From the IMG/VR virus record IMGVR_UViG_3300021959_006017, positions 1 to 64,000 of that record: 64,000 nucleotides of DNA; one strand, written 5' to 3'. Both the position numbers and the translations under genes were made by a program. This document shows, one piece after another, positions 1,622 to 14,187 of this stretch; within the stretch, counting starts at the first letter, position 1; every line of letters begins with the position of its first letter. The notes under the pieces were generated by a model, which saw nothing but the letters and a program-made list of their open reading frames with translations, had not been told where the DNA came from and made no database searches.

Positions 1622-4600
1622 ATGGCTGATTTTAAACTTGGTAGAATTAGATTTATATGGAAGGGGGACTGGAGTGCCTCAACTACATATTACAAAGATG
1701 ACATCGTAAGGAACGGTGGTAATACATATGTATGTATAACAGGACATACATCTAGTATTAGTTTTCCAGATGATCAGTCAAACTGGAATAAAATAACAGA
1801 TGGCCAAGAGTGGAAAGCAGATTGGGCAGTTAGCACATATTATAAAGAAAACGATATTGTAAAATATGGCGGTTATTTATATATTGCAAATACTGCACAC
1901 ACTTCAGCAGTAACAGCCACAGCAGGATTAGAAAACGATCAAGCTAAATGGGATTTGTATGCTGAAGGTTTTGATTATCAAGCAGATTGGCAGCCAAACT
2001 ATCGCTACAAAATTAACGACATTGTAAAGTATAACTCAACTATCTATCTATGTACAGAAGGCCATACTTCGGCAGCAGACTCACTAACAGGTCTTGAAGT
2101 AGATCAAGACAAGTGGGATGTGTTTTCTCAAGGTGTAAGTTGGCAGGGAGATTGGCAAACTAACACAAGATATCTTGTAAATGATATTATTCGTTACGGT
2201 GGTAGAACTTATCTTTGTAACACAGGTCATGTAAGTGCTTTAACAGCAGCACTAGGACTAGAAGCAAACCAAGCAAGTTGGGATATTTTCCATGACGGTA
2301 TTGAATACAAAGGAGAATGGGCCTCTGGTACAAGATATAAACTAAACGATTTAGTAAAATCAGGCGGAGGTATTTGGATTTGTACAACATACCACACAAG
2401 TCAAAACTACCTATCAGATGATGAAGCAAAATGGGCTCAGTTTACTGAAGGTTTAGAGTTTGAAGATAGCTGGAGCGGCACACGTAGATATCAAGCAGGC
2501 GATTTTGTAACATACGGTGGTTACTCATATGTTGCTATTACAAATAACGTAGGACAACGTCCATCGGATAATCCAACAGATTGGGATCTATTTACTACTG
2601 GTTTTAGACTAGTTGGAGATTGGGGCGAAGATTCAAGTAGTTATGAATATTTTGTAGGTGATGTTGTACGTCAAGGTGGATATACATATCTATGTATTCT
2701 TGATCATACAGGACAAGAGCCTCCGAACACAACATACTGGGAAAGACTTAACCAAGGTATTGAATGGAACGATGCCTGGACAGATGCAACCGAATATGAT
2801 TTGGGCGATGCAGTGCGCTACGGAAGCAGCAGTTATATTGCAGTGCAAAAACATACTTCAGACGAAGTTGGTACACAAAACAGACCAGATCAAGATGTAA
2901 CAGGAGACTACTGGAACCTGCTATCAGGAGGAGGCGAAACACTTCCGCTTACAACTGAAGGTGATATAGTTTACTACGGCGGCGCAGGTCCAACAAGATT
3001 ACCAATCGGTGATCCAGGGCAATCACTAAGAGTAAACGCAACAGGTGATGCACCCGAGTGGAGCTTCTTTGGAAAGATTAATCACGTATGGTATACATCA
3101 ACAGACAATGGGGTTGACAGTCCAGCACCAAACTACGGTACTACACTTGATCAACCTTGGAAAACTATACGCTATGCACTAGAGCAGATTGAAAAAGGTG
3201 CTCTATATCCAAACGCTGCATATATACTCGAAGCAAATAGAGCATTTATACAAGCAGAAACAGTTGAGTGGGTTGACTATCAGATTGCAAACGTTATTGC
3301 TCCATTTACTGGATCATTTACATACACAAAAGAAACATGCCGTAGAGACGTAGGTCAAATCATTGATGCACTTATTTGGGATTTAACACACGGCGGTAAT
3401 AAGCGTATGCGTGATGCTACACTTACTTACTTTGACAGCAGCGGCGACTTAATCGCAGAAATTGCTGACGAAGATGGTGAAACATCAGCAGCACTAAAGT
3501 ATACACTAGAACTTATTGATAGTGCTATACTACAAAGTATTGATCCTGCAACAAACTATCAAACTGAAAATGCTGTAGGTAGTCCGATAACACAAGTAAA
3601 AGATTTAGCTACATATCCTGAAGAGACTGGTGCACAAACTAGACTTGATACACTGATGGCTATTGTAACAGATGCACTAGATGCAGAAAGCTCGGCAGAT
3701 GTTCCTGCTCAAGTTATTCCAAACAATTCATTGTTTGTTAAAACTGGAATTTACTCAGAAACACTTCCGATGGTTGTTCCTGTACAAACAGCAGTTGTAG
3801 GCGATGAACTACGTTCAACACGTATTACGCCAGCAGGCAGCTTAGTAGATAGTGGTGATACAACTTATACACTAGCGGGTATTGCTAGACTACAATCACT
3901 TACAGAAGATATTGTTACAAATACAGCAGTTACAAAGACAGCAGGTAATGCTGAATCACAAGTTACAACCCGTCCAGCAGGCGGAGCTAATCCTGCTATT
4001 CATGCAGCTGATTTGTGGCAACAAATTTATGATTATATTAACTGGGGTGTAAACGGTGCATCAGGTGACTCAACAGAACCTGTATTTAATGGAACAAATA
4101 CTCCTCAAACTTCAACAGACTTCACATATGCTGTTGAAGTACTAGAAGCAAACAGAACATTCTTAGTAGAGGAAGTTATTGCATACATTGCTGCTACTTA
4201 TCCTGCATATACATACGACGAAGACAGGTGTCGTAGAGATACAAACAGATATATTGACGCTATCAAATATGATCTTATATATCAGCCAGATTCTTCAGCA
4301 ACACCAGTAGAAACTAAAGGTAACTATAAGTCACTTAGTGCAGCAAGACTATATGTAAATGCTGTAAACGGATCAACTACAGAAGATATGTTCTATATGC
4401 GTAATGCTACTGGGCTAAGAAATTGTACACTAGCTGATTTAACAGGTACATTAAGTGCTGCTAATCAGTACGGAACAAGTCGTCCTACAGCTGGAGCATA
4501 TGTATCATTAGATCCAGGTTGGGGACCAGATGATTCTAGAGTTTGGGTAACAAACAAATCCCCATATGTACAAAATGTTTCAACATTCGGTACAGGTTGT

Positions 4601-6463
4601 ATAGGTCTAAAAGTAGACGGTGATCTACACAACGGTGGTAACGACTCTATTGTTGCTAACGACTTTACACAAATCTTAAGTGACGGTATTGGTTATTGGG
4701 TTACAAACTTAGGACGTTCAGAACTTGTATCTGTGTTTACATATTATAACCATATTGGTTACCTAGCAGAGAACGGTGGTAAGATCCGTGCAACAAACGG
4801 TAACAACTCATACGGTGACTTTGGTTCAGTATCAGAAGGTATTGATGACACAGAAGTTCCTGTAACTGCTGATGTAGACAACAGGACACTTGATGCTATT
4901 GTTGATAGTGTTATGACAGATGGTGATGATGTACTTGTTCTCAACTACTTAAATGCAGGACAGAACTATACAGCAGGCGGCACAACTATTAGCATTAGCG
5001 GTGAAGGTTATGGCTTAGGTACTGTAACACCTACTACTGTAAATGGTGGCGTCTTTCAAGTTAGAATGTTAGATACTGATGTAGACGGAGACAGCACAGC
5101 AGACACTGGCGGAGCCGATTATAAAGGTTCAACAAATAGTGCGCAGGAAGGTGATGCAACTAGTATTACTATTTCAAACACTGATACTGCTTTAAGTGCG
5201 CAATACATTGGTATGGCAATATATATTACAGCAGGAACAGGTGCAGGACAGTATGGATACATTAACAGCTATAACCAAGGTACAAAGGTTGCTCAAGTAT
5301 ACAAAATGAGTGATGGTACAGCTGGTTGGGATCATGTGATCGGAAATGCTATTGTAAGTGCGCTTGATGCTACAACTGAATATTCAATCGAACCGAGATT
5401 AACACTTAGTGCTCCACCAAGTGGATTATACGCAGATACTGCAAAAGGTCGTGCTATTATAGCTGACGAACAAATTGCACGTATTGTTATTTGGGATCCA
5501 GGCACAGGATACACAAGTGCTCCTACACTAACTATTACAGATCCTAACAATACTATCGAAGCACCTACTCAAGTTAGAATAGGCGACGGTGTACTTGCAC
5601 AACCTACATTCTCAGACAGAGGTACAGCATTTACTACTGCTACAGCAGAAGTAAGCGGAGACGGTTATGCAGATCAGTATCAACCAGGAGATTTTGTAGA
5701 AGTATCAAATCTTACAGAAGAACCACAGCCTGGTTCAAATATTGTGTTTAACCATTTACCAGATAAAGTGTTTAAACTTGTTACAGTAAGAGATTTTTCA
5801 GGTGCAGGTCCTTATTCAGCACAGTTACAAGTGTCACCAGAACTTACTATTACAGAAGCACCTGAACACAACGAATCCTTAGAAATGAGAATACGTTACT
5901 CTCAAGTACGTCTAACAGGTCATGACTTCTTAGACATTGGTACTGGTAACTTTTCAGAAACAAACTATCCAAATCAACCTTTGTATGATTCGGATCCAGA
6001 AAAAGAAACTACAGAATCAGGAGGAGGACGAGTGTTCTTCACCTCAACGGACCAAGATGGTAACTTTAGAGTTGGCGACTTGTTCTCCGTTGAACAGAGT
6101 ACTGGTATTGCTACACTAAATGCTGATGCATTTAATATCAGTGGTCTACAAGAACTGTCACTAGGCGAACTTGGATTAGGAAGCACAGGTGCGGTGATTA
6201 GTGAGTTTAGTACAGATGGTACGTTTACTGCTAATAGTGATAATATTGTTCCAACGCAAAAAGCTATTAAAACATATATTACTTCACAAATTGGTGGCGG
6301 CGCAGCAACACTAAACGTAAATAGTGTAACTGCTGGTCAGATTACTATTAGTGGTCAAGAAATAACCACTAACCTTGAAACCAAAATTGATGTTCAAACA
6401 GTAATGAACTTTGAAAAAGGTGTTACGGGCGTACCAGTAGCAATGAATTATTTCTTATCATAA
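1622..6463 (+). CDS. Large virion structural/tail fibre protein (1613 aa) with N-terminal Trp/Tyr-rich carbohydrate-binding-like repeats
   Basis: Eight ~50-aa repeats W.GDW...T.Y..ND.V.YGG..Y.C...HTS...W (CBM5/12-like pattern); two 'Y...CRRD...IDA...DL' modules; beta-helix-like middle (SPYVQNVSTFG...DFTQILSDGIG); Thr/Gly/Asp-rich. Confidence 0.7.
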   Translation: MADFKLGRIRFIWKGDWSASTTYYKDDIVRNGGNTYVCITGHTSSISFPDDQSNWNKITDGQEWKADWAVSTYYKENDIVKYGGYLYIANTAHTSAVTATAGLENDQAKWDLYAEGFDYQADWQPNYRYKINDIVKYNSTIYLCTEGHTSAADSLTGLEVDQDKWDVFSQGVSWQGDWQTNTRYLVNDIIRYGGRTYLCNTGHVSALTAALGLEANQASWDIFHDGIEYKGEWASGTRYKLNDLVKSGGGIWICTTYHTSQNYLSDDEAKWAQFTEGLEFEDSWSGTRRYQAGDFVTYGGYSYVAITNNVGQRPSDNPTDWDLFTTGFRLVGDWGEDSSSYEYFVGDVVRQGGYTYLCILDHTGQEPPNTTYWERLNQGIEWNDAWTDATEYDLGDAVRYGSSSYIAVQKHTSDEVGTQNRPDQDVTGDYWNLLSGGGETLPLTTEGDIVYYGGAGPTRLPIGDPGQSLRVNATGDAPEWSFFGKINHVWYTSTDNGVDSPAPNYGTTLDQPWKTIRYALEQIEKGALYPNAAYILEANRAFIQAETVEWVDYQIANVIAPFTGSFTYTKETCRRDVGQIIDALIWDLTHGGNKRMRDATLTYFDSSGDLIAEIADEDGETSAALKYTLELIDSAILQSIDPATNYQTENAVGSPITQVKDLATYPEETGAQTRLDTLMAIVTDALDAESSADVPAQVIPNNSLFVKTGIYSETLPMVVPVQTAVVGDELRSTRITPAGSLVDSGDTTYTLAGIARLQSLTEDIVTNTAVTKTAGNAESQVTTRPAGGANPAIHAADLWQQIYDYINWGVNGASGDSTEPVFNGTNTPQTSTDFTYAVEVLEANRTFLVEEVIAYIAATYPAYTYDEDRCRRDTNRYIDAIKYDLIYQPDSSATPVETKGNYKSLSAARLYVNAVNGSTTEDMFYMRNATGLRNCTLADLTGTLSAANQYGTSRPTAGAYVSLDPGWGPDDSRVWVTNKSPYVQNVSTFGTGCIGLKVDGDLHNGGNDSIVANDFTQILSDGIGYWVTNLGRSELVSVFTYYNHIGYLAENGGKIRATNGNNSYGDFGSVSEGIDDTEVPVTADVDNRTLDAIVDSVMTDGDDVLVLNYLNAGQNYTAGGTTISISGEGYGLGTVTPTTVNGGVFQVRMLDTDVDGDSTADTGGADYKGSTNSAQEGDATSITISNTDTALSAQYIGMAIYITAGTGAGQYGYINSYNQGTKVAQVYKMSDGTAGWDHVIGNAIVSALDATTEYSIEPRLTLSAPPSGLYADTAKGRAIIADEQIARIVIWDPGTGYTSAPTLTITDPNNTIEAPTQVRIGDGVLAQPTFSDRGTAFTTATAEVSGDGYADQYQPGDFVEVSNLTEEPQPGSNIVFNHLPDKVFKLVTVRDFSGAGPYSAQLQVSPELTITEAPEHNESLEMRIRYSQVRLTGHDFLDIGTGNFSETNYPNQPLYDSDPEKETTESGGGRVFFTSTDQDGNFRVGDLFSVEQSTGIATLNADAFNISGLQELSLGELGLGSTGAVISEFSTDGTFTANSDNIVPTQKAIKTYITSQIGGGAATLNVNSVTAGQITISGQEITTNLETKIDVQTVMNFEKGVTGVPVAMNYFLS
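1655..2930 (+). repeat. Eight degenerate ~50-aa tandem protein repeats within the 1613-aa CDS
   Basis: Units begin WKGDW, WKADW, YQADW, WQGDW, YKGEW, FEDSW, LVGDW, WNDAW; boundaries approximate. Confidence 0.8.
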
Positions 6464-6478
6464 CGGAGACAAAACAAA

Positions 6479-6799
6479 ATGGCAACAGGAATATTAGGAA
6501 CAGCAGATATGGCAGCAGGTACAGAAACAGTTCTGTATACTGTTCCTGCAGATACATTTGCTGTAACAAGTGTTTCGTTCTGTAATAGAGGTAATGCTGC
6601 AATCACTGTACGACTTGCAGTGTGCGTAGCAGACACCGCAACAGCAGACGAATATATAGAATATGACACCACTATACAAGCTAAAGGTGTCTTGGAAAGA
6701 ACAGGTATTGTTCTAGATGCAACCAAAAGAATAGTAGCTTATTCAAGTGCTGAAAATGTTTCAGCAGTTGCATTTGGAATTGAGACCTCAACGGCATAA
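6479..6799 (+). CDS. Small virion structural protein (106 aa)
   Basis: GGAG RBS; beta-rich 'LYTVPA...V.FCNRG...VRLA...EYIEYD...LERTGIVL' pattern typical of small tail-region proteins. Confidence 0.6.
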   Translation: MATGILGTADMAAGTETVLYTVPADTFAVTSVSFCNRGNAAITVRLAVCVADTATADEYIEYDTTIQAKGVLERTGIVLDATKRIVAYSSAENVSAVAFGIETSTA

Positions 6800-6825
6800 A
6801 TACATTAACAAAGGAAACTACTACA

Positions 6826-7158
6826 ATGGGAAGATTTATTACAGAGACCGGAACAGCTTCTACAGTAATTCGTGAAGTAAGTGGAACCTATACAGCCGAA
6901 GTTAATGACCGTATTCTTGCAGATACAACAGTCAGTGCTTTTACAATCACTTTACCTGTTAACTCAAGTTTGTTAGTAAACGACACTATTCAAATAATTG
7001 ATGTTACTTCTAGTTTTGGAACTAATGCAGTAACATTATCAAGAAACGGTTCACTAATACAAGGCGCAAGTGATAATTTAGATTTAGACCTAAATGGTGC
7101 ATCTATTACACTTATGTATAGCGGATCAACATACGGTTGGATTATTATAGGAACATAA
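6826..7158 (+). CDS. Small tail-fibre-associated protein (110 aa)
   Basis: 'DTT..AFTITLP....ND.I.IID....FGTN.VT..RNG..IQG...L.L...GA...L.Y.....GW' is a domain commonly seen in phage tail-fibre proteins; CATAAATA at 6795 and AAGGA RBS upstream. Confidence 0.6.
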   Translation: MGRFITETGTASTVIREVSGTYTAEVNDRILADTTVSAFTITLPVNSSLLVNDTIQIIDVTSSFGTNAVTLSRNGSLIQGASDNLDLDLNGASITLMYSGSTYGWIIIGT

Positions 7159-7161
7159 GAT

Positions 7162-8046
7162 ATGGCATCACTACGATCACTACTAGACAAAGGAAGTGTT
7201 GACTCATTAAATGCAGGACCGCAGCCAGCCTATATGGAAGGTGACTACGAGTCAATGTACTTTCATACAAGATGTACACAGCAATATGAAACATCATATG
7301 GAAAAAACTGTATTGACTGGTGGCAACTACCTTCCGACGTAACAAGCACAGTTACTATGGAAGTCTGGGGCGGCGGCGGAGGCGGCGCTGGTAGTGGAAC
7401 GTGTGGTTGTAACTTTGGTTGGCCAGGCGGGTCTGGAGCATATGTAAAGAAAACATTTACACAAGCAGAAATTGCAACAGCAAAAGGAACTTGCTATTGT
7501 ATGTGTATTTCTCCAGCAAGTTGTTGCTCGCCAAACGAAACTTGTGGATACAAAGGCTGCAAAAGCTGGATTATAGGTTCAGGACTAAGCAACTTCTGTG
7601 CAGATGGCGGAGAGCCGGGTTGTACGTTGTTCTGTATGACAGGATGTGGCGGTAACTGGACAGGTATGTGTCCACACCCAAATGATGGAACATGTGCTTG
7701 TTATTATGATTGCACAGATCCAACAGTAACTGGTGTTCCAGGTAGACATGGATTTTTATACGCAAACTTCCATTGTGACAGTAACTGGTGTTATTATTCA
7801 CAAATATTTGCAGGACCACCGTTTGACGGTAACAACGATACTGTTTATCATTTAGTAAGATTCTGCGGTAACGTAGAAGCGTATCATGATAGATGTAAAG
7901 CAGGCGGCTTTATGGCAGCAGGCATGAGAGGCGATAGCGAAAATATTCCAATCGGAGTAGGTGGTAACAGTACTAGAGTATGCGGCGACGGTTGTTGCTG
8001 CGGCTGGGGTGGCGGTCCTGGTTTAGTAAGGATAAATTGGAAGTAA
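7162..8046 (+). CDS. Cys/Gly-rich tail-tip/adhesin-like protein, paralogue 1
   Basis: MASLRSLL N-terminus, EVWGGGGGG, PGGSGAY, C-terminal GGPGLVRINWK; 27 Cys in 294 aa (hand count). Confidence 0.6.
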   Translation: MASLRSLLDKGSVDSLNAGPQPAYMEGDYESMYFHTRCTQQYETSYGKNCIDWWQLPSDVTSTVTMEVWGGGGGGAGSGTCGCNFGWPGGSGAYVKKTFTQAEIATAKGTCYCMCISPASCCSPNETCGYKGCKSWIIGSGLSNFCADGGEPGCTLFCMTGCGGNWTGMCPHPNDGTCACYYDCTDPTVTGVPGRHGFLYANFHCDSNWCYYSQIFAGPPFDGNNDTVYHLVRFCGNVEAYHDRCKAGGFMAAGMRGDSENIPIGVGGNSTRVCGDGCCCGWGGGPGLVRINWK

Positions 8047-8047
8047 A

Positions 8048-8953
8048 ATGGCAGGATTAAGAGACTTATTTGGAAAATATGAACAAGTAACACAAAGCGA
8101 AATCGATGGCGGAACTATTGAAGTTACCGGCTATGACGGTAAAATGTTTACTGTTGACACATTCTGTCATCCATCGATGAATGGTCCTACTTGTTGTGAT
8201 GCTTACAACGCAAACTTAGTTTGTTACTGGTGTGTGCCAGCAGGCACAACTGGCATGAAGATTGAAATCTGGGGCGGTGGCGGCGCCGGCGCAGGTATGC
8301 GTGGCTGTCATGGAGGTATTCCAGGTGGATCTGGTTCTTGGGCTGTAAAAAGTATTACTAGCACAGATTTTTCAGACGGTGACTGCTACTTGTTGTGTTC
8401 AGGAAACGGCGGACGTTGGTGCTGTTGTCAATGTATTGGTTGCCGTGGATGTAAATCATATGTTACAGGTAACGGATTAACTAACTTTTGTGCAGATGGC
8501 GGATTTGGCGGATATGTTAACTGCTTCTGCTATATTAGACAGTGTTGTATTTCAGGACCAAACGGTGACGGACGTGGCGTAGACTATGGCTGGCACTATA
8601 TGGGTCGTAGCGGATGCTGTTCAGAATACTTTGGTGCAGACTGCGGCGAATATGGTGTTCCAGGTTGGTATACAAACTATTGTGGTTGCGGATCAGATTG
8701 TACACCGTGTTGGGTAAAACAATGGGTTCCAAACTCACCAGGTATAGTTTCAACCGGCGGAATGCATAACGGTGTTCGTGTACAAGGTTGGGCATGTAAT
8801 AATGAATACACACAATGTTCAGTAAACGGACCAGATCACGGACACTATAACTTCCCAAGAGCAATGGGCGGTGTAAGTATGACAACATGTGGTGATGGTA
8901 CTTGCTGTGGTAACCCAGGCGGTTCTGGACAAGTAAGAATCACATATAAATAA
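8048..8953 (+). CDS. Cys/Gly-rich tail-tip/adhesin-like protein, paralogue 2
   Basis: MAGLRDLF, EIWGGGGAG, PGGSGSW, GGSGQVRITYK; 31 Cys in 301 aa (hand count). Confidence 0.6.
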   Translation: MAGLRDLFGKYEQVTQSEIDGGTIEVTGYDGKMFTVDTFCHPSMNGPTCCDAYNANLVCYWCVPAGTTGMKIEIWGGGGAGAGMRGCHGGIPGGSGSWAVKSITSTDFSDGDCYLLCSGNGGRWCCCQCIGCRGCKSYVTGNGLTNFCADGGFGGYVNCFCYIRQCCISGPNGDGRGVDYGWHYMGRSGCCSEYFGADCGEYGVPGWYTNYCGCGSDCTPCWVKQWVPNSPGIVSTGGMHNGVRVQGWACNNEYTQCSVNGPDHGHYNFPRAMGGVSMTTCGDGTCCGNPGGSGQVRITYK

Positions 8954-8962
8954 GGACAGGAA

Positions 8963-9796
8963 ATGGCAAGTTTAAGAGATTTACTAAACATAGAAACAGC
9001 AGCAGATCTAGCAGGACAAGCCGGCGCTGTACCTGGAAAACAATGGGTAGCACAGGCTACATGTCAGCAGTGTCAGTTTGACTCTTACGGTGACTGGTGT
9101 TGTAACGTGTTTATTGTTCCATCAGGTACATCAGAGATTATTTTCGATGTATGGGGCGGCGGTGGCGGCGGTGGCCGTTCAGCATGCTGTGGCGCAGGTG
9201 GACCAGGTGGATCCGGTGCTTGGGCACGTAGATGTATTAATAGTGAAGAGTTTGGCATAGGCGATTGTTATAGAGTTACAGTCGGTCGTGCTACTTACTG
9301 CTCACAAGATCAGACAGGATGCGCAGGTAACTATAGCTGTGTATGTAGTATTGAAAACGACTTTGTAAGAGTTTGTTCAGAAGGCGGCGGACGTGGATGC
9401 TGGTATTGTTTTGCAGATTGCTGTACAACTAATGCATACTGCACATGTGAGCAAAAATGTGCTTACGGTGGAGACATTAACGTAAAAGGACACCCAGGTT
9501 GTTTCTGGCACAGATGTTTAGAAGATCACTGCTATGACAAGATAGGTTTTGCTTATCCAGGCGGACTTAACAACAAATGTGGCGGCGTTGTTTGGACACA
9601 AGTATGCTGTAAATATGCACACGGCTCAGCACTACAAAACTATGCAATAGGTATACTTGGTAGTACTGCAGGAAGCCAATATTGCTGTAACGGTTATATG
9701 CCAGGAGTAGGCGGCGGAACAATGCCAACAGAAGACGGTGTATGTCGCTGTGGACTACAAGGTACACCAGGATTAGTAAGAGTAACATATAGATAA
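8963..9796 (+). CDS. Cys/Gly-rich tail-tip/adhesin-like protein, paralogue 3
   Basis: MASLRDLL, DVWGGGGGGG, PGGSGAW, GTPGLVRVTYR; 30 Cys in 277 aa (hand count). Confidence 0.6.
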   Translation: MASLRDLLNIETAADLAGQAGAVPGKQWVAQATCQQCQFDSYGDWCCNVFIVPSGTSEIIFDVWGGGGGGGRSACCGAGGPGGSGAWARRCINSEEFGIGDCYRVTVGRATYCSQDQTGCAGNYSCVCSIENDFVRVCSEGGGRGCWYCFADCCTTNAYCTCEQKCAYGGDINVKGHPGCFWHRCLEDHCYDKIGFAYPGGLNNKCGGVVWTQVCCKYAHGSALQNYAIGILGSTAGSQYCCNGYMPGVGGGTMPTEDGVCRCGLQGTPGLVRVTYR

Positions 9797-9808
9797 GGTA
9801 AAAATAAA

Positions 9809-10684
9809 ATGGAAATTATAACAGAAGATTTTACATACAATGTTCCAGATAGTTACCTAAGTACTGCAACAACAGAAGGTAAAACTAACACTCTTACCTA
9901 TACAGGACCTAATGAAATATGGGTATTTGTTGATAAAGTTTCAGGAAAACTGGACTGGAGTATGCATGCACTTATTAACTTTGACGAAGGAATGCAAGAA
10001 ATAGCAATAACTCATGCAGGACAATATCATAAACCAATACTTGTTCATTTCGATCAAAATCCTTTGATTTGTTGGGCAATGTATGGCGATCTTGATTGGG
10101 ATTCTTTAGGAGAAAAAACGTTCACACTTGACGGAGAAACTGAGCCTTATTATAGACACCCTGATCCTTTACCACCACAACTGATTTATGATTATCCTTC
10201 TTTTGTATATTTGTTTGATAGCAGCACTTGGAAACAACCTTATCCTATGCAAACACCTAAACAAACACAGGACGATGTTGAAGGATATATAGCTGCATAC
10301 ATAGCAGATATTGAAAAACATATTGCTGACTCTAACAGTGGTTTAACAGCTGATCAAAAAACAACAATGACAGCAGCTAAAACTACAGCAGAAGGTATTG
10401 TAGCAAAATATGGTCCAGACGGAGCAAATGTTCCTTATTGGATGTGGCCACCTTGTCCTCCTACACCAGATTGGGATCCTAATATGGAAGAAGACACTGA
10501 TGTACCAGAAGCAGAACGTTGGGATTCAGCAGCTGATGGCTCAGAAGGTGCGGGTGCTGAAACTAACTATCAGCCAGAAAATAACGAACCTACTCCAGCA
10601 TCAGAAAGCGAAGCATTTCCTAACACAGATAGCCAGCAAACTGAAGCAGGTGAACTACCAGACGAAGACGCTCCAACAGAATAA
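9809..10684 (+). CDS. Hypothetical protein, possible tail-fibre assembly chaperone, with acidic disordered tail
   Basis: Last gene of the fibre transcription unit; helical segment followed by W.WPP.P motif as in Tfa-like chaperones; D/E/P-rich C-terminus. Confidence 0.4.
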   Translation: MEIITEDFTYNVPDSYLSTATTEGKTNTLTYTGPNEIWVFVDKVSGKLDWSMHALINFDEGMQEIAITHAGQYHKPILVHFDQNPLICWAMYGDLDWDSLGEKTFTLDGETEPYYRHPDPLPPQLIYDYPSFVYLFDSSTWKQPYPMQTPKQTQDDVEGYIAAYIADIEKHIADSNSGLTADQKTTMTAAKTTAEGIVAKYGPDGANVPYWMWPPCPPTPDWDPNMEEDTDVPEAERWDSAADGSEGAGAETNYQPENNEPTPASESEAFPNTDSQQTEAGELPDEDAPTE

Positions 10685-10691
10685 AATAGAT

Positions 10692-10723
10692 AAAAAAGGC
10701 TTCATTTCTAGAAGCCTTTTTTT
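10692..10723. terminator. Bidirectional rho-independent terminator
   Basis: AAAAAAGGCTTC-atttcta-GAAGCCTTTTTTT. Confidence 0.8.
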
Positions 10724-10744
10724 ATGGCTGGATTAAAGTGCGTA

Positions 10745-10752
10745 TATAAATA
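10745..10752 (+). promoter_or_regulatory. Late promoter TATAAATA, 5 nt before ATG 10758
   Basis: Exact T4 late consensus directly after the terminator. Confidence 0.7.
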
Positions 10753-10757
10753 TTTGC

Positions 10758-11345
10758 ATGGAAGATCCAAGAGATGAATATCGTATATTACCAAATCTTT
10801 TACCTAAATCCTATGCAGATCTTTTAGAAGCTGAACTTTCTAAAATACATTGGTATTGGTATCCAAGTGCTTCAGGAGATGTTGCTGTAGATCCCGATGA
10901 CAAAAATATTTTTGATTCTCCCCAAATGCAACATGTTTTTATTGAAGAAAATGAACCAATATCTCCGTATGCTTCTCTAATACAACCAGTAGTTTGGTTT
11001 TTAGAAAAAGAAATGCAAATGAGTATTAAAAATATTGTACGTGTAAAAGCAAATCTTTTAATGCCAGGTAGATCAAACTTAGATAACTATAATATTCCTC
11101 ATGTTGATTCTCCAAGCGACGATTATATTAGCATGGTTTATTATGTAAACAATGCAGACGGTGATACTAAAATATTTCACAAAACACTTGACGAAGGACA
11201 CAAAGACTTATATACTATAGCAGGCATTAGTCCTAAGAAAGGAAGAGCTGTAATGTTTAAATCAAATAGATTTCATGCAAGCACACCCCCGTTTAAAGCT
11301 GATAAAAGAATAGTATTAAACTTTGTATTACAACCAGGAACATAA
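10758..11345 (+). CDS. 2OG-Fe(II) oxygenase
   Basis: PHVD (HxD), SMVYYVNNADGDT, FHAS..P...KRIVLNF (distal His and Arg). Confidence 0.8.
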   Translation: MEDPRDEYRILPNLLPKSYADLLEAELSKIHWYWYPSASGDVAVDPDDKNIFDSPQMQHVFIEENEPISPYASLIQPVVWFLEKEMQMSIKNIVRVKANLLMPGRSNLDNYNIPHVDSPSDDYISMVYYVNNADGDTKIFHKTLDEGHKDLYTIAGISPKKGRAVMFKSNRFHASTPPFKADKRIVLNFVLQPGT

Positions 11346-11347
11346 AA

Positions 11348-12391
11348 ATGACAGATAGAGCAAAAGCCTTTTTTATTAATGGAGGTGCAGGCAGGGTGCT
11401 TGCTAGTATTCCAGCATTAGAAAAGTATTATGAAGAAACTAGCCAAGACTTTATTATTGTAGCAGAAGGCGGAATGGACCTCTATAAAGGTCATCCAATA
11501 CTACATGAACGTGCATATGATGTTTGGCATAAAGGAATATTCCAAGACAAAATTAAAAATATGGATGTAGTAACTCCAGAACCATACAGAGTGTGGGAGT
11601 ACTACAATCAAAAATGTAACCTACAACAAGGTTTTGATATAGAAATAAACGGTAAAGGTATAAGAGATCTTCCAAGACCTTTTATACATTTAACACAAGA
11701 AGAAAAAGTAAATGGTAAAGCATGCATTAAAGAGGTATTAGATAATGTAGGTTTTAATAAAACTATCGTATTCCAACCATTTGGAAGAGGCATAGGAGAA
11801 CACGCAGGGTTTTTAACAGATCCAAGTGGAAGAAGTTTTGAATATGCAAATATAATAAGCATTGTGAAGAAGTTACAAGAAAAAGAGTTTGCAGTTATTT
11901 TAATGAGTGAACTAAACTTAGACTTCCAAAAAGAAGGAACGCCGAAACCTGTTGCACAGCCAAGTGGAATAGGTTTAAAGCAGTGGGCAGCTATTATTGC
12001 CGAAGCAGACTATTTCTTAGGCTGCGATAGTGTGGGACAACATATTGCACACAGTTTAAATAAACCTGCTACAGTAGTAACTGGTAGCACTTTTGCTGAA
12101 AATGTTAGTTTTTTAGATGATGAAAAGTTTGATATTCAAGACATGGGAGAAAGTAAAAGAAAATATGATCCTATTAGAATAGTACCAGACGAAGTTGTTG
12201 CAAAAAACAACGATGGTATAATGGCTATGAATGGTCCCATTGAAGACGAGATTATTAAAAACTTAATAAAAAACTTTGAAAAATATGTAAAAAAAGAAAC
12301 TACAGTAAAAAAGAAAGTTTCTGAACTTACTAACAAAACAAACAATACAGCACCTAAGCTGGTGCCTGGTTTATCACCTATTAAGGAATAA
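11348..12391 (+). CDS. GT-B glycosyltransferase, GT9 (heptosyltransferase)-like
   Basis: N-terminal GGAGRVLASIPAL and C-terminal WAAIIAEADYFLGCDSVGQHIAHSLNKPATVVTGST, matching the GT9 'L..AA.I..A..F.G.DSG..H.A.A...P...L.G.T' pattern. Confidence 0.65.
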   Translation: MTDRAKAFFINGGAGRVLASIPALEKYYEETSQDFIIVAEGGMDLYKGHPILHERAYDVWHKGIFQDKIKNMDVVTPEPYRVWEYYNQKCNLQQGFDIEINGKGIRDLPRPFIHLTQEEKVNGKACIKEVLDNVGFNKTIVFQPFGRGIGEHAGFLTDPSGRSFEYANIISIVKKLQEKEFAVILMSELNLDFQKEGTPKPVAQPSGIGLKQWAAIIAEADYFLGCDSVGQHIAHSLNKPATVVTGSTFAENVSFLDDEKFDIQDMGESKRKYDPIRIVPDEVVAKNNDGIMAMNGPIEDEIIKNLIKNFEKYVKKETTVKKKVSELTNKTNNTAPKLVPGLSPIKE

Positions 12392-12393
12392 AA

Positions 12394-14187
12394 ATGAGCG
12401 AAGAAAATAAAGACATTTGGATTGCAGGTATTACAAGAGGACATAATGGAGGTGTCTGTTTATTAAAAAACGGCGAAGTTATATTTGCTACTGAAGAAGA
12501 ACGTTATTCTCGGTACAAGTATGATGGCGGACCACTAGCTAGTATGCTTAAAATTAAAGAATATACAGATAAACTTGATTATATAGTTGTTGCTCACACG
12601 CAAAGTTTAAAAGATACAGCAGGTATTATTGATTTCTCAGGCGATGACATGTATACTGGTTGGGCAAGAAAGTTAGGCCTTATAGAAAGAAAGAATGTAG
12701 ATTTAAGAAATCACCCACAAGTAATGGATCTAAGCCACATGCATCATAGACTACATGCTGCTTGTGCTTTTTATAGATCTGGATTTGACGAAGCAGTAGC
12801 CGTTATTGTTGATGGCGCCGGTACTTTTATTCCAATGCAAATAAATGAGAATGAACATGCATACGGATTTGAAGTTGAAAGTTTATTCGACTGTTCTTAT
12901 CCTGCAAACTTTGCTACTTTATTTAAAAGTATAGGACTTAAAAATGGCGGAGTTCGTACTCAAATAGATAATGTAGAAACTTTTGGAGAAGAATACGAAA
13001 GCGTTATACATGATAGAGCAGGTATTGTTAAAGTGTATGAAGCTGTTACTGAGTTTTGTGGATTTCCTGCTATTGAAGCAGGTAAAACTATGGGACTATT
13101 TCCGTACGGTGAACCTAACGAAAATATTCCACCGTTGTTTGAAAAAGGCGGTCGTGTTAGATTAAGTAATAGAAATGTTATTATACCAACGTATCCTAAC
13201 TCTGCACTAGTAAACTTTCAACAATATGATGAACTAAAAGACGGTTTAGCAAGTGACTTAACTAAGTTACAAAATCGCAGAGATCTAGCATATGCTGTCC
13301 AGACACAATCACAAGATCAGGTTGTAGAATATATTCGTCAGGCTGTTGCAATGAGTGGTAAAAAGAATGTTGTTATTTCAGGCGGCTATGGATTAAACTG
13401 TGTTGCTAACTATCATTACTTAGAAGCACTCAAAGACGAAGATATTAACATATATGTAGAACCTGTTAGTAATGATGCAGGCACAGCTATAGGTGGTGCA
13501 CTAATGACATATTACCATTTGTCTGAAAGCACTGAAAATAAAGGTATTAACCATAACTTATATTTAGGTATTCCTTATACTTATGAAATAGACGAGATTG
13601 AATCATTAGCACAAGAATACGGAGCAACAGTAACAGATGCTACAAATGAAGATGTAGTTGATTTAATCACTAGTAAAAACATTGTAAGTGTATTCCAAGG
13701 AGGATCAGAATCAGGACCTAGAGCACTTGGTAACAGAAGTATACTTTATGATCCAACAGATCCAGATGGAAAAGATTTTGTTAATACTGTAAAACGCAGA
13801 GAATACTTCCGTCCGTTTGCTGGTAGTATCCTTGAAGAAGATGTACACGAATGGTTTGATTTACGTGGTATGGAAAGCTCACCTACAATGATGTATGCTG
13901 TAAACTGTCAGCCAGGCATTGAAGAAAAGATTCCTGCTATTATTCATGTAGACGGTACTTGTCGTATACAAACTGTTAATAGAGAACAAAATGCAAACTA
14001 TTATGATTTGATTAAAGCCTTTAAAGAAAAGACAGGCTGTCCGATTATCTTTAATACTAGCTTTAACTTAGGCGGTGAACCATTAGTAGAAACACTAGAA
14101 GATGCATTTTGGACACTACAGCAAAGTGATATTGAATACTGTTATCTTCCAGAATATGGTAAGTTGTTGTCAATCAAAAACGCATAA
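12394..14187 (+). CDS. O-carbamoyltransferase (NodU/CmcH/TobZ family)
   Basis: GHNGGVCL..EEERYSRYK, HHRLHA..AF..SGF, VDGAG, EAGKTMGL.PYG, GG..LNCVAN, DAGTAIG, ESGPRALGNRSIL, KRRE.FRPFA, HVDGTCRIQTV, NTSFNL.GEPLVET. Confidence 0.93.
   Translation: MSEENKDIWIAGITRGHNGGVCLLKNGEVIFATEEERYSRYKYDGGPLASMLKIKEYTDKLDYIVVAHTQSLKDTAGIIDFSGDDMYTGWARKLGLIERKNVDLRNHPQVMDLSHMHHRLHAACAFYRSGFDEAVAVIVDGAGTFIPMQINENEHAYGFEVESLFDCSYPANFATLFKSIGLKNGGVRTQIDNVETFGEEYESVIHDRAGIVKVYEAVTEFCGFPAIEAGKTMGLFPYGEPNENIPPLFEKGGRVRLSNRNVIIPTYPNSALVNFQQYDELKDGLASDLTKLQNRRDLAYAVQTQSQDQVVEYIRQAVAMSGKKNVVISGGYGLNCVANYHYLEALKDEDINIYVEPVSNDAGTAIGGALMTYYHLSESTENKGINHNLYLGIPYTYEIDEIESLAQEYGATVTDATNEDVVDLITSKNIVSVFQGGSESGPRALGNRSILYDPTDPDGKDFVNTVKRREYFRPFAGSILEEDVHEWFDLRGMESSPTMMYAVNCQPGIEEKIPAIIHVDGTCRIQTVNREQNANYYDLIKAFKEKTGCPIIFNTSFNLGGEPLVETLEDAFWTLQQSDIEYCYLPEYGKLLSIKNA

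What the first reader, a model, noticed from the sequence alone, without database searches (positions are those of the whole stretch)
7162..9796. Three tandem Cys- and Gly-rich paralogues (27, 31, 30 Cys): candidate heterotrimeric, disulfide- or metal-laced tail tip
Seen: three diverged ~290-aa genes sharing the N-terminus MA(S/G)LR(S/D)L(L/F), a WGGGG..PGGSG core, C(A/S)(D/E)GG, and C-terminal G..G.VR(I/V).(W/Y)(K/R), with about 10% Cys including CC and CCC runs. Established: Gly-rich polyglycine-II sandwich domains form T-even gp38 adhesins; such Cys density is rare in proteins folded in a reducing cytoplasm. Inference: exactly three paralogues may form a heterotrimer or switchable receptor-binding set, with Cys cross-linking after lysis, binding metals, or acting as modification sites.
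Basis: partly seen in the sequence, partly recalled or inferred. Interest (0 to 1): 0.7.

Follow-up and report, generated by a model that had tools for sequence, protein, structure and literature searches.

The report
Three-gene cysteine-rich cyanophage fibre tip
Three neighbouring, very cysteine- and glycine-rich genes of a marine/estuarine T4-like cyanophage encode tail-fibre tip (receptor-binding) domains of a known fold, kept as an ordered set of three in nearly all relatives and probably building one mixed three-part tip, which is unusual for phages.

Summary

They belong to a large, virus-only, cysteine-rich subfamily of the TNF-like plus glycine-rich ("TG") fibre-tip fold. The closest solved structures are cyanophage Pam3 fibre gp24 (Z 16.7), mycobacteriophage Bxb1 tail-tip chain Qb (Z 13.6) and ALK/LTK (Z 8-10).

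The genes sit in a conserved late module. Its order is: big CBM5/12 tail fibre, a 106-aa protein, a 110-aa XD1-like (T4 gp10/gp9-type) module, the trio, a tail-fibre-chaperone-like protein and a terminator. A GT9-like enzyme and a carbamoyltransferase follow.

All 62 related loci with intact flanks have exactly three copies. The copies form three position-specific orthologous clades. One distant lineage has six copies, an en-bloc duplicated trio. The P-SSM2 type has only two.

A complex model supports a cyclic 1:1:1 heterotrimer (ipSAE 0.73 against a best control of 0.36).

No switching machinery was found. The cysteine chemistry is unresolved: CC pairs are enriched, CxxC is not, and Cys counts are odd as often as even.

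Verdict: a new variant of a known kind, of moderate to high interest.

The parts
1622..6463 (+). Large tail fibre protein (1613 aa) with N-terminal CBM5/12-type repeats. It heads the conserved module.
   Evidence: PHROG 9851 'tail fiber protein', E 1e-223. Pfam CBM_5_12, 7 stretches. Present upstream of the trio in most related loci.
6479..6799 (+). 106-aa protein resembling the N-terminal part of short tail-fibre proteins. It is the best conserved small gene of the module.
   Evidence: PHROGs 11338 and 693 'tail fiber protein'. Syntenic at 42-87% identity in relatives. No PDB relative by sequence.
6826..7158 (+). 110-aa stand-alone XD1-like module (T4 gp10/gp34 and CBA120 TSP4-N type). Candidate adaptor or anchor for the trio. 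Its stop codon lies 3 nt before the start of copy 1.
   Evidence: A profile of 28 homologues hits CBA120 TSP4-N residues 94-176 (E 1e-16), T4 gp34 residues 97-162 and T4 gp10 residues 58-138. Domain limits are from PMC8825819. A homologue lies directly upstream of the family genes in all 62 bracketed loci, where it served as the upstream bracket, and in L081 and L084. It is absent in S-SSM7 and Sf-FS3.
7162..8046 (+). Copy 1 (c1): 294 aa, 27 Cys. Cys-rich TNF-like plus Gly-rich (TG) fibre-tip protein.
   Evidence: Belongs to the position-1 orthologous clade. In the complex model its N-arm (residues ~27-34) docks on copy 3.
8048..8953 (+). Copy 2 (c2): 301 aa, 31 Cys. This is the copy that was modelled.
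   Evidence: AF2 model with pLDDT 78.7 and pTM 0.78. Pam3 gp24 Z 16.7, Bxb1 chain Qb Z 13.6, ALK/LTK Z 8-9.6. Its start is 1 nt after the stop of copy 1.
8963..9796 (+). Copy 3 (c3): 277 aa, 30 Cys. The only copy above the Pfam Gly_rich_2 threshold.
   Evidence: PF21722, 27.3 bits against a cut-off of 24.3. Belongs to the position-3 clade. It was the partner chain in the complex model.
9809..10684 (+). 291-aa protein with a folded N-terminal ~220 aa and an acidic, disordered tail. Probable fibre assembly chaperone.
   Evidence: PHROG 9740. AF2 pLDDT 83. AFDB clusters named 'Phage tail assembly chaperone-like domain' (E 8e-7, TM 0.52-0.54). 2 of 40 homologues hit Pfam PF16778 Phage_tail_APC (best E 2.5e-8). 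The L084 homologue also carries PF16778, weakly. A homologue follows the family genes in all 62 bracketed loci, where it served as the downstream bracket, and in L081 and L084.
10692..10722 (.). GC-poor palindromic hairpin followed by a T run. It looks like an intrinsic terminator and closes the fibre, trio and chaperone unit.
10745..10752 (+). TATAAATA, a T4-type late-promoter-like box 6 nt upstream of the next gene.
   Evidence: The match count in the whole window is not above chance, so this rests on position only.
10758..11345 (+). 2OG-Fe(II) oxygenase (195 aa). A variable member of the neighbourhood.
   Evidence: Pfam PF13640. Present in only some related loci.
11348..12391 (+). GT9-like (heptosyltransferase-like) protein, 347 aa. 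Tightly co-inherited with the Cys-rich family.
   Evidence: Weak matches to Pfam GT9 and to TIGR02201/RfaQ. PHROG 8954. 36-84% identical in the related loci and in 23 of 24 phage records; the 24th, Aeromonas phage HJ05, is 28.9%. The cyanophage isolates that carry it are the same ones that carry the family.
12394..14187 (+). NodU/CmcH-type (Nol-like) carbamoyltransferase, 597 aa.
   Evidence: Pfam Carbam_trans_N and Carbam_trans_C. PHROG 1601. Syntenic in nearly all related loci.

Best explanation
The three genes encode the distal, receptor-binding tip of a tail-fibre or baseplate appendage of a T4-like cyanophage (Kyanoviridae-like, estuarine).

Each protein has three parts:
- a ~30-residue N-terminal arm with a conserved M-x-x-L-R-x-L-L motif;
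- a TNF-like beta-sandwich;
- a lattice of glycine-rich (polyglycine-II-like) strands, with variable loops between the conserved Gly motifs.

Proposed assembly (inferred):
- The three ancient paralogues are made in near-equal amounts from tightly spaced genes in one late transcription unit.
- They are folded with help from the chaperone-like protein encoded just downstream.
- They assemble 1:1:1 into a pseudo-threefold ring. The N-arm of each subunit lies on the 'PYPGGL...GG' segment of the next, in the order c1 to c3 to c2.
- The three shared N-terminal motifs probably dock the ring onto a trimeric partner. The upstream XD1-like 110-aa module or the big fibre are the candidates.
- The result would be one tip with three different loop surfaces.

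Role of the cysteines (inferred): the ~90 cysteines per trio are mostly internal. They most likely staple the glycine lattice and loops by disulfides once the particle is in oxic water. Some are left unpaired or metal-bound.

Shown here: the genes, the family, the fold by model, the synteny, the copy number, the orthology, and a complex model that beats its controls.

Inferred, not shown: presence in the virion, the heterotrimer itself, the docking partner and the cysteine chemistry.
For: Fold:
- AF2 model of copy 2 has pLDDT 78.7.
- It matches Pam3 gp24 at Z 16.7 over 189 residues covering the TNF-like and Gly-rich domains. Bxb1 tail-tip chain Qb gives Z 13.6 and ALK/LTK TG domains Z 8-9.6. 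The next match is Z 3.4.
- Pam3 gp24 is a trimeric receptor-binding fibre with its chaperone gene downstream (PMC9608196).

Context:
- Tail-fibre PHROGs flank the trio.
- There is an XD1-like module upstream and a chaperone-like protein downstream.
- A terminator-like hairpin follows the chaperone-like gene.
- The same module is found in S-CAM1 and S-CAM3 and in ~75 viral contigs.

Trio as a unit:
- 62 of 62 bracketed loci have exactly three copies.
- The three positions form three clades with the minimum possible number of label changes.
- The six copies in L081 pair 1 with 4, 2 with 5 and 3 with 6.
- S-SSM7 and Sf-FS3 have three position-orthologous copies.
- Intergenic gaps are 3, 1 and 9 nt.

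Hetero-association:
- ipSAE 0.73 against a best control of 0.36. That mark was reached by 58 of 80 solved complexes and 2 of 110 mismatched pairs.
- The three runs share at least 53% of contacts, and partner pLDDT is at least 68.
- Both sides of the interface are conserved differently in each paralogue.

Docking motif: the N-terminal motif is shared by the paralogues within a lineage but differs between lineages.

Cysteines:
- About 12 Cys columns are conserved family-wide, next to Gly motifs.
- CC pairs are enriched about 2-fold (z 26), while CxxC is not enriched.
- There is a precedent for functional disulfides in a cyanophage tail (PMC9942802).
Against: - No virion proteomics exists for any phage carrying the family. 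The cyanomyovirus virions analysed in the one paper checked (S-SM1, S-PM2, Syn9) are not among the phage records that matched the family by tblastn.
- P-SSM2 and P-SSM5 carry only two copies, split by the chaperone-like gene. Three is therefore not a rule of the wider family.
- The complex model cannot tell a heterotrimer from homotrimers of close paralogues. Only one job was allowed, so homotrimers were not modelled. The tool itself warns that cousins of a true partner also pass.
- Cys counts are even in only 52% of proteins and in 26 of 51 trios. Complete disulfide pairing inside the complex is therefore excluded.
- No phage-encoded disulfide-forming enzyme was found.
- Cys-Cys geometry could not be examined.
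Confidence: 0.55

Rival explanations
1. Three separate homotrimeric short fibres or adhesins. Each paralogue trimerises with itself, as Pam3 gp24 does, and occupies its own site or recognises its own receptor. Three is kept because there are three docking sites or three needed specificities.
For: The nearest solved relative, Pam3 gp24, is a homotrimer. Copy number is 2 in P-SSM2 and 6 in L081, as expected for a modular set of receptor-binding proteins. The complex tool warns that close cousins of a true partner also pass.
Against: There was no loss, gain or reordering in 62 of 62 loci, even though the copies have diverged to 30-40% identity. All paralogues of a lineage share one N-terminal docking motif, which would make homotrimers compete for the same site. 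The six-copy array is a duplicated trio, not a set of single-gene gains. Both sides of the interface are conserved asymmetrically.
Confidence: 0.27
2. Monomeric caps. Each protein sits alone on the end of a trimeric fibre, as the gp38 adhesin of phage S16 caps gp37, giving three alternative or parallel tips.
For: The same kind of glycine-motif and variable-loop architecture is seen. There is a short N-terminal attachment segment instead of the long helical bundle of Pam3 gp24.
Against: No sequence match to gp38 families. S16 gp38 is not among the structural matches. The complex model gives extensive, confident contacts between paralogues. The TNF-like domain is a classic trimer-forming fold.
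Confidence: 0.08
3. Metal-laced tips. The cysteines mainly hold metal-thiolate clusters (Zn, Fe, Cu or Cd, metallothionein-like), either for folding in the reducing cytoplasm or for metal-related host recognition. Disulfides would be secondary. This concerns only the cysteine chemistry, so it can hold together with any of the assembly models, including the best explanation.
For: The parity of Cys counts is random. Variable Cys appear and vanish in co-occurring groups of 3-5, for example C...CxxC...C and C...CxC...C. CC and CxC are enriched. No disulfide-forming enzyme is encoded.
Against: CxxC is not enriched at all (z -0.1). His content is low, 1.9%. The co-occurrence clusters are confounded by shared ancestry. 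Trace metals are scarce in seawater, while the environment is oxidising. Pam3 shows that disulfides work in cyanophage tails.
Confidence: 0.15
4. A switchable or phase-variable receptor-binding set. Only one of the three would be used at a time, through inversion, recombination or targeted mutagenesis.
For: None found beyond the tandem arrangement. Metagenome contigs do fragment across the region, which suggests strain-level diversity.
Against: No inverted repeats in 6000-11000. No reverse transcriptase in the 236-kb record. All three ORFs are intact, co-oriented and tightly spaced. Order and number are fixed in relatives. The joints seen in contigs have sides under 30 nt on Gly-codon repeats, or come from related phages.
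Confidence: 0.02

Closest known systems
Cyanophage Pam3 tail fibre gp24 with chaperone gp25 (PDB 7YPX, 7YFW)
   Same: It shares the TNF-like domain followed by a lattice of glycine-rich motifs with variable distal loops (Z 16.7, 189 aligned residues). It is a trimeric receptor-binding fibre, the host is a cyanobacterium, and the chaperone gene lies directly downstream. Disulfides matter in that tail.
   Different: Pam3 has one gene and forms a homotrimer held by a long N-terminal helical bundle. Here there are three diverged paralogues with only a ~30-residue N-arm. Here Cys is ~10% inside the TG domain; in the Pam3 papers read, the only gp24 cysteine discussed is Cys28 in the helical domain. 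Sequence identity is 17-18%, and no PDB hit is found by sequence.
Mycobacteriophage Bxb1 tail-tip chains Qa/Qb (PDB 9D93) and the Pfam PF21722 Gly_rich_2 'glycine-rich domain' proteins of phages
   Same: Same fold (Z 13.6 for chain Qb; Foldseek E 5e-7). Copy 3 passes the Pfam threshold. Many BFVD relatives are tail proteins. PMC13243192 lists polyproline-II/polyglycine-II-type helical bundles in Bxb1 gp33 'wing brush' and gp29 domains. I did not establish which of these chains Qa/Qb are.
   Different: Those proteins were not noted as cysteine-rich. None is described as an ordered trio. Copies 1 and 2 fall below the Pfam cut-off.
ALK/LTK extracellular TG (TNF-like plus glycine-rich) supradomain
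   Same: The same two-part fold is recovered in about a dozen ALK/LTK PDB entries (12 at Z 8.1-9.6 in VIA-align).
   Different: ALK/LTK are animal cytokine receptors and act as monomers that dimerise on ligand. There is no functional relation; this is a fold-level likeness only.
T-even type gp38 adhesin (Salmonella phage S16)
   Same: Conserved glycine-rich motifs alternate with hypervariable segments in a receptor-binding tip.
   Different: S16 gp38 is a monomer that caps gp37. It has a beta-helix, not a TNF-like domain. There is no sequence or top structural match here.
Three consecutive tail proteins of virophage DSLV2, which form a heterotrimer binding Synechococcus LPS (PMC12724248)
   Same: Three tandem paralogous genes are conserved by position. 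Co-purification there supports a 1:1:1 fibre. The proteins are related to Synechococcus phage fibres. This is the nearest precedent for the proposed architecture.
   Different: It is a different fold (like the T4 gp37 tip, with a collar domain). The proteins are about 19 kDa each. The words cysteine and glycine do not occur in that paper.
C1q globular head and lymphotoxin alpha1-beta2 (from my own knowledge, not tested here)
   Same: These are heterotrimers of paralogous TNF-like jelly-roll domains. For C1q the three chains are encoded by three clustered genes, each contributing its own binding surface.
   Different: They are animal immune proteins with no glycine lattice and no homology claimed. 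The analogy concerns only how a mixed trimer widens recognition.

Membership tests
PHROG 4205 (phage protein family of unknown function) | Full-length match to the family profile | tested here: met
   All three copies match at E 2e-39 to 4e-50 and cover positions 1-285 of 287.
Pfam PF21722 Gly_rich_2 (glycine-rich domain) | Score above the curated gathering threshold (24.3 bits) | tested here: inconclusive
   Copy 3 scores 27.3 bits and passes. Copy 2 scores 18.3 bits, below the threshold. Copy 1 has no hit. Many close homologues carry the precomputed domain.
TG supradomain fibre tips (Pam3 gp24 type) | TNF-like beta-sandwich continuous with a multilayer lattice of glycine-rich motifs | tested here: met
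   Predicted model only. Z 16.7 and rmsd 3.0 A over 189 residues against 7YPX_A residues 78-275. There is a sharp drop to Z 3.4 after the TG structures.
TG supradomain fibre tips (Pam3 gp24 type) | Long N-terminal alpha-helical bundle that drives homotrimerisation and docks to the wedge | tested here: not met
   The model has only two 5-residue helices before the first strand at residue 32. The structural alignment starts at model residue 30-31.
TG supradomain fibre tips (Pam3 gp24 type) | Dedicated assembly chaperone encoded immediately downstream | tested here: met
   The 291-aa protein has a chaperone-like fold and weak or partial PF16778 membership among its homologues. It is not the same family as Pam3 gp25.
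TG supradomain fibre tips (Pam3 gp24 type) | Component of the virion that binds the host receptor | not testable with these tools
   No proteomics or binding data exist for any carrier. The literature searches found none.
T-even gp38 adhesins | Sequence or structural match to gp38 (S16 6F45 type) | tested here: not met
   No Pfam hit at E up to 1 other than Gly_rich_2. 6F45 is absent from the Foldseek and VIA-align lists.
Heterotrimeric tandem-paralogue fibres (DSLV2-like architecture) | Three consecutive paralogues conserved by position | tested here: met
   62 of 62 bracketed loci have three copies. The positions form three clades.
Heterotrimeric tandem-paralogue fibres (DSLV2-like architecture) | Physical 1:1:1 complex | tested here: inconclusive
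   Model only: ipSAE 0.73 against a best control of 0.36. That mark was reached by 58 of 80 solved complexes and 2 of 110 mismatched pairs.
Classical cysteine metal sites (zinc ribbon or knuckle, Fe-S, thioredoxin-like CxxC) | Conserved, enriched CxxC pairs | tested here: not met
   CxxC occurs 461 times against 462 expected (z -0.1). CC has z 26 and Cx4C z 14. Copy 1 has no CxxC at all.
Fully disulfide-bonded extracellular cysteine-rich domains | Even number of cysteines, with all of them paired | tested here: not met
   Counts are even in 52% of 155 proteins and in 26 of 51 trios.

The most novel reading that the evidence does not exclude
The trio is an obligate pseudo-threefold heterotrimeric receptor-binding tip, with three different recognition faces on one fibre end. 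Its ~90 cysteines form a redox- or metal-sensitive internal scaffold.

It is functionally coupled to the strictly co-inherited GT9-like heptosyltransferase, carbamoyltransferase and ADP-heptose genes. Those enzymes would either decorate the tip itself (protein heptosylation, possibly on Ser, Thr or Cys) or mask the LPS receptor that the tip recognises on infected cells.
Probability: 0.2. Interest if true: 0.85.

Novelty: new variant of a known kind. Interest (0 to 1): 0.62.

Why it matters
Receptor-binding proteins decide which cyanobacteria a marine phage can kill, and for T4-like cyanophages they are largely unknown.

This work identifies a widespread, virus-only family as the likely tips. 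A profile search found 377 sequence clusters at E <= 1e-10. Cultured carriers include S-CAM1, S-CAM3, S-SSM7, Sf-FS3, P-SSM2 and P-SSM5.

A tip built from three different subunits would be a rare design in tailed phages. It would offer a simple way to combine several specificities in one fibre.

The extreme cysteine content raises a testable question: is infectivity of these phages controlled by redox state or by metals, as reduction does for Pam3?

The strict linkage to a heptose, carbamoyl and glycosyltransferase gene set points to an unexplored link between adhesins and glycan modification.

Because cultured carriers exist, all of these questions can be tested at the bench.

Tried and rejected
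- DNA-level search of the phage collection found nothing. Protein-level searches were needed.
I rebuilt the alignment without them.
- As a substitute I tried presence/absence covariation of Cys columns. It gives clusters of 3-5 columns rather than clean pairs, and it is confounded by shared ancestry.
- Parity tests exclude full pairing but do not identify the chemistry.
- A profile search of PDB sequences with the trio found nothing, and the same was true for the 106-aa protein.
- The Bxb1 structure paper is not held.
- Cyanophage proteomics papers do not cover any carrier of the family.
- Laying metagenome contigs on the locus gave fragmented unitigs and short-sided joints on glycine-codon repeats. 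Nothing interpretable as rearrangement was seen.
- Inversion or DGR switching was rejected.
- A phage-encoded disulfide oxidase was sought and not found. Only a glutaredoxin is present. The Erv1 control search rang nowhere, so that one negative result is weak.
- Independent triplication in the S-SSM7/L084 lineage was considered but is not resolved by the trees.
- A scan of cellular genomes found no relative. It used a single motif pattern, so distant members could have been missed.


Full report
**1. The observation**

The window carries three tandem + strand ORFs at 7162-8046, 8048-8953 and 8963-9796.
- They encode 294, 301 and 277 aa with 27, 31 and 30 Cys (9.2-10.8%) and 50, 61 and 49 Gly. 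CC and CCC runs are present.
- Other long ORFs of the window average 1.3% Cys, and the next richest has 3.8%.

**2. The genome**

The window is the first 64 kb of a 236,751-bp IMG/VR virus record.
- Neighbouring genes match tail-fibre and virion-protein PHROGs typical of T4-like cyanophages.
- The closest cultured relatives of the locus are Synechococcus phages S-CAM1 and S-CAM3 of the Kyanoviridae.
- Near-identical DNA occurs in estuary and marine metagenomes from 2017 to 2025.

**3. Family and fold**

- All three copies match PHROG 4205 (unknown function) over their full length.
- Only copy 3 passes the Pfam Gly_rich_2 (PF21722) threshold.
- An AlphaFold2 model of copy 2 from a 61-sequence alignment has pLDDT 78.7 and pTM 0.78.
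- Foldseek and VIA-align place residues ~30-301 on the TNF-like plus glycine-rich domains of cyanophage Pam3 fibre gp24 (Z 16.7, 189 residues, 3.0 A).
- The next matches are Bxb1 tail-tip chain Qb (Z 13.6) and ALK/LTK TG domains (Z 8-9.6). After these, Z drops to 3.4.
- BFVD and AFDB matches are mostly phage 'glycine-rich domain', minor tail and tail-fibre proteins.
- In Pam3, this domain pair is the receptor-binding end of a homotrimeric fibre. Its chaperone, gp25, is encoded next to it.
- Along the family alignment, conserved Gly motifs alternate with poorly conserved, indel-rich segments. This is the same pattern described for Pam3 gp24 and S16 gp38.
- There is no match to gp38 itself.

**4. 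Surroundings**

The gene order is as follows.
- A 1613-aa tail fibre with CBM5/12 repeats.
- A 106-aa protein.
- A 110-aa protein.
- Copies c1, c2 and c3.
- A 291-aa protein.
- A hairpin with a T run at 10692-10722.
- A TATAAATA box at 10745-10752.
- A 2OG oxygenase.
- A GT9-like protein.
- A carbamoyltransferase.

What the small flanking proteins look like:
- A profile of the 110-aa protein hits the XD1 domain of CBA120 TSP4-N (residues 94-176, E 1e-16). It also hits the equivalent parts of T4 gp34 and gp10.
- Those XD domains belong to trimeric proteins that organise branched fibre complexes (PMC8825819).
- The 291-aa protein models well (pLDDT 83). It resembles AFDB clusters named 'phage tail assembly chaperone-like'.
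- 2 of 40 of its homologues, and its counterpart in locus L084, hit Pfam Phage_tail_APC.
- Gaps between the 110-aa gene, c1, c2 and c3 are 3, 1 and 9 nt.

**5. Copy number and orthology**

- Pattern scanning of viral contigs returned 75 loci.
- Every locus bracketed by a 110-aa homologue upstream and a 291-aa homologue downstream has exactly three family genes. That is 62 of 62 loci, 51 of them distinct.
- Loci with fewer copies are cut by contig ends.
- In a tree of 165 proteins from 55 loci, positions 1, 2 and 3 form three groups with the minimum possible two label changes. None of 200 shuffles was as low (repeated).
- The triplication is therefore old, and the gene order is fixed.

The wider family:
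- A profile search of 1.84 billion cluster representatives gave 2008 hits at E <= 1e-3 and 377 at E <= 1e-10. Almost all of the best 150 have 5-13% Cys.
- Locus L081 (TARA) has six copies. They pair 1-4, 2-5 and 3-6, which is a duplicated trio.
- L084, S-SSM7/S-SSM6a and Sf-FS3 have three copies. S-SSM7 and Sf-FS3 are orthologous position by position.
- P-SSM2 and P-SSM5 have two larger copies, separated by the chaperone-like gene.
- No relative was found in 185,579 cellular genomes.

**6. Heterotrimer test**

- One complex job was run with c1, c2 and c3, each with a 30-row orthologue alignment.
- It gave ipSAE 0.70, 0.80 and 0.73 (median 0.73) against a best control of 0.36.
- That mark was reached by 58 of 80 solved complexes and 2 of 110 mismatched pairs in the tool's calibration.
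- The runs share at least 53% of contacts, and partner pLDDT is at least 68.
- Contacts are cyclic. The c1 N-arm (27-34) lies on c3 204-211, and the c3 N-arm (23-30) lies on c2 234-242.
- The receiving segment is the homologous 'PYPGGL...GG' stretch. It is strongly conserved in c3, less so in c2 and weakly in c1. The N-arms carry paralogue-specific conserved residues.
- The extreme N-terminal motif is shared by all paralogues of a lineage: MxxLRxLL here, MAKNL in L081, MA.Y.SYKK in the S-SSM7 type. It differs between lineages. This fits a common docking partner.

Caveats: homotrimers could not be modelled, and paralogues can pass such a test. The heterotrimer is the best-supported reading but is not shown.

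**7. The cysteines**

- Family members have 21-46 Cys.
- About a dozen Cys columns are conserved across all three paralogues. Most lie beside Gly motifs, for example the CCC after the first Gly run, NFCADGG and the C-terminal CGGGCCCG.
- Counts are even in 52% of proteins and in 26 of 51 trios. Not every Cys can be in a disulfide inside the complex.
- Variable Cys come and go in groups of 3-5 columns. Shared ancestry confounds this result.
- CC is enriched about two-fold (z 26), Cx4C has z 14 and CxC z 6. CxxC is at expectation. This speaks against classical zinc or Fe-S knuckles.
- The confident interface contacts are not Cys-Cys pairs.
- The neighbouring module proteins are Cys-poor. The network therefore looks internal to the trio.
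- The record encodes a glutaredoxin but no thioredoxin, DsbA or Erv1-type enzyme.
- Pam3 shows that cyanophage tails can depend on disulfides.

My working view is disulfide staples formed in oxic water, plus some free or metal-bound thiols. This is inference.

**8. Switching**

- There are no inverted repeats in 6000-11000. The direct repeats found there are the homologous Gly-motif stretches of the paralogues plus two short two-copy matches.
- There is no reverse transcriptase in the genome.
- Contig joints in metagenomes are short-sided matches on Gly-codon repeats, or come from related phages.

A switchable set is not supported.

**9. Linked enzymes**

- The GT9-like protein and the carbamoyltransferase follow the trio in nearly every locus. 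They are far better conserved than the trio, at 36-84% identity in loci and phage records against 30-40%.
- Among cyanophage isolates, the set carrying the GT9-like gene is the same set that carries the Cys-rich family.
- In several of these phages, ADP-heptose synthesis genes lie alongside.

This suggests a functional tie: either modification of the tip or modification of its receptor. It was not tested further.

**10. Comparison and verdict**

- The proteins work like, and fold like, Pam3 gp24-type TG fibre tips.
- They differ in being three ancient paralogues with a short N-arm instead of a helical bundle, and in carrying about 10% Cys.
- The nearest precedent for the proposed architecture is the three-gene heterotrimeric fibre of virophage DSLV2, which has a different fold.
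- I found no description of this cysteine-rich trio in the literature searched.

I rate it a new variant of a known kind, with interest about 0.6.

Noticed in passing
window 11348-14187; also L004, L005, L084, L087, L088, L089: A GT9-like (heptosyltransferase-like) gene and a NodU-type carbamoyltransferase always follow the Cys-rich genes. In S-CAM1, S-CAM3, S-SSM7, Sf-FS3 and P-SSM2 they lie with ADP-heptose synthesis, heptose isomerase, epimerase and cupin ('cysteine dioxygenase') genes. Among cyanophage isolates, the set with the GT9-like gene equals the set with the Cys-rich family. This could mean glycosylation of the tip or masking of an LPS receptor.
   Followed up: partly
L081:5736-11824 (TARA contig): Six tandem Cys-rich family genes (298-362 aa), all starting MAKNL or MAKIL. 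They pair 1-4, 2-5 and 3-6, so the whole trio was duplicated en bloc. Members 2 and 5 are very divergent and lack the usual C-terminal R-I-T-Y motif.
   Followed up: partly
L088:4988-7854 (Prochlorococcus phage P-SSM2): The P-SSM2 and P-SSM5 type has only two family genes (356 and 355 aa, 36 Cys each), separated by the chaperone-like gene. This is an exception to the rule of three and would be a good contrast case for experiments.
   Followed up: partly
window 1622-6463: The 1613-aa tail fibre starts with at least seven CBM5/12-type (chitin/carbohydrate-binding-like) repeats of ~50 aa with a W..W...Y...D.V motif. Relatives keep this fibre but vary greatly in its length.
   Followed up: no
window 10692-10752: A perfect AT-flanked hairpin with a T run lies right after the chaperone-like gene and is followed by TATAAATA. 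Together they look like a terminator plus a T4-type late promoter that separates the fibre unit from the enzyme genes. A second TATAAATA at 8945-8952 is formed by the last codons of copy 2.
   Followed up: partly
window 10758-11345: This 195-aa protein matches PHROG 274, labelled 'DNA endonuclease V' (E 1e-30). Pfam, however, sees a 2OG-Fe(II) oxygenase domain. The PHROG label may be misleading for this family.
   Followed up: no
window 6400-10800 in metagenome runs X7-X10: Assembled contigs of estuary metagenomes break into 150-450-nt pieces across the trio, while flanking genes assemble over more than 1 kb. Several related variants share the conserved blocks of the 106- and 110-aa genes. This suggests high strain-level diversity at the locus.
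   Followed up: partly
window 15547-21360: A 1937-aa virion structural protein (PHROG 5838) lies downstream and has weak similarity (30%) to the 1613-aa fibre. The region therefore holds at least two giant fibre-like genes.
   Followed up: no
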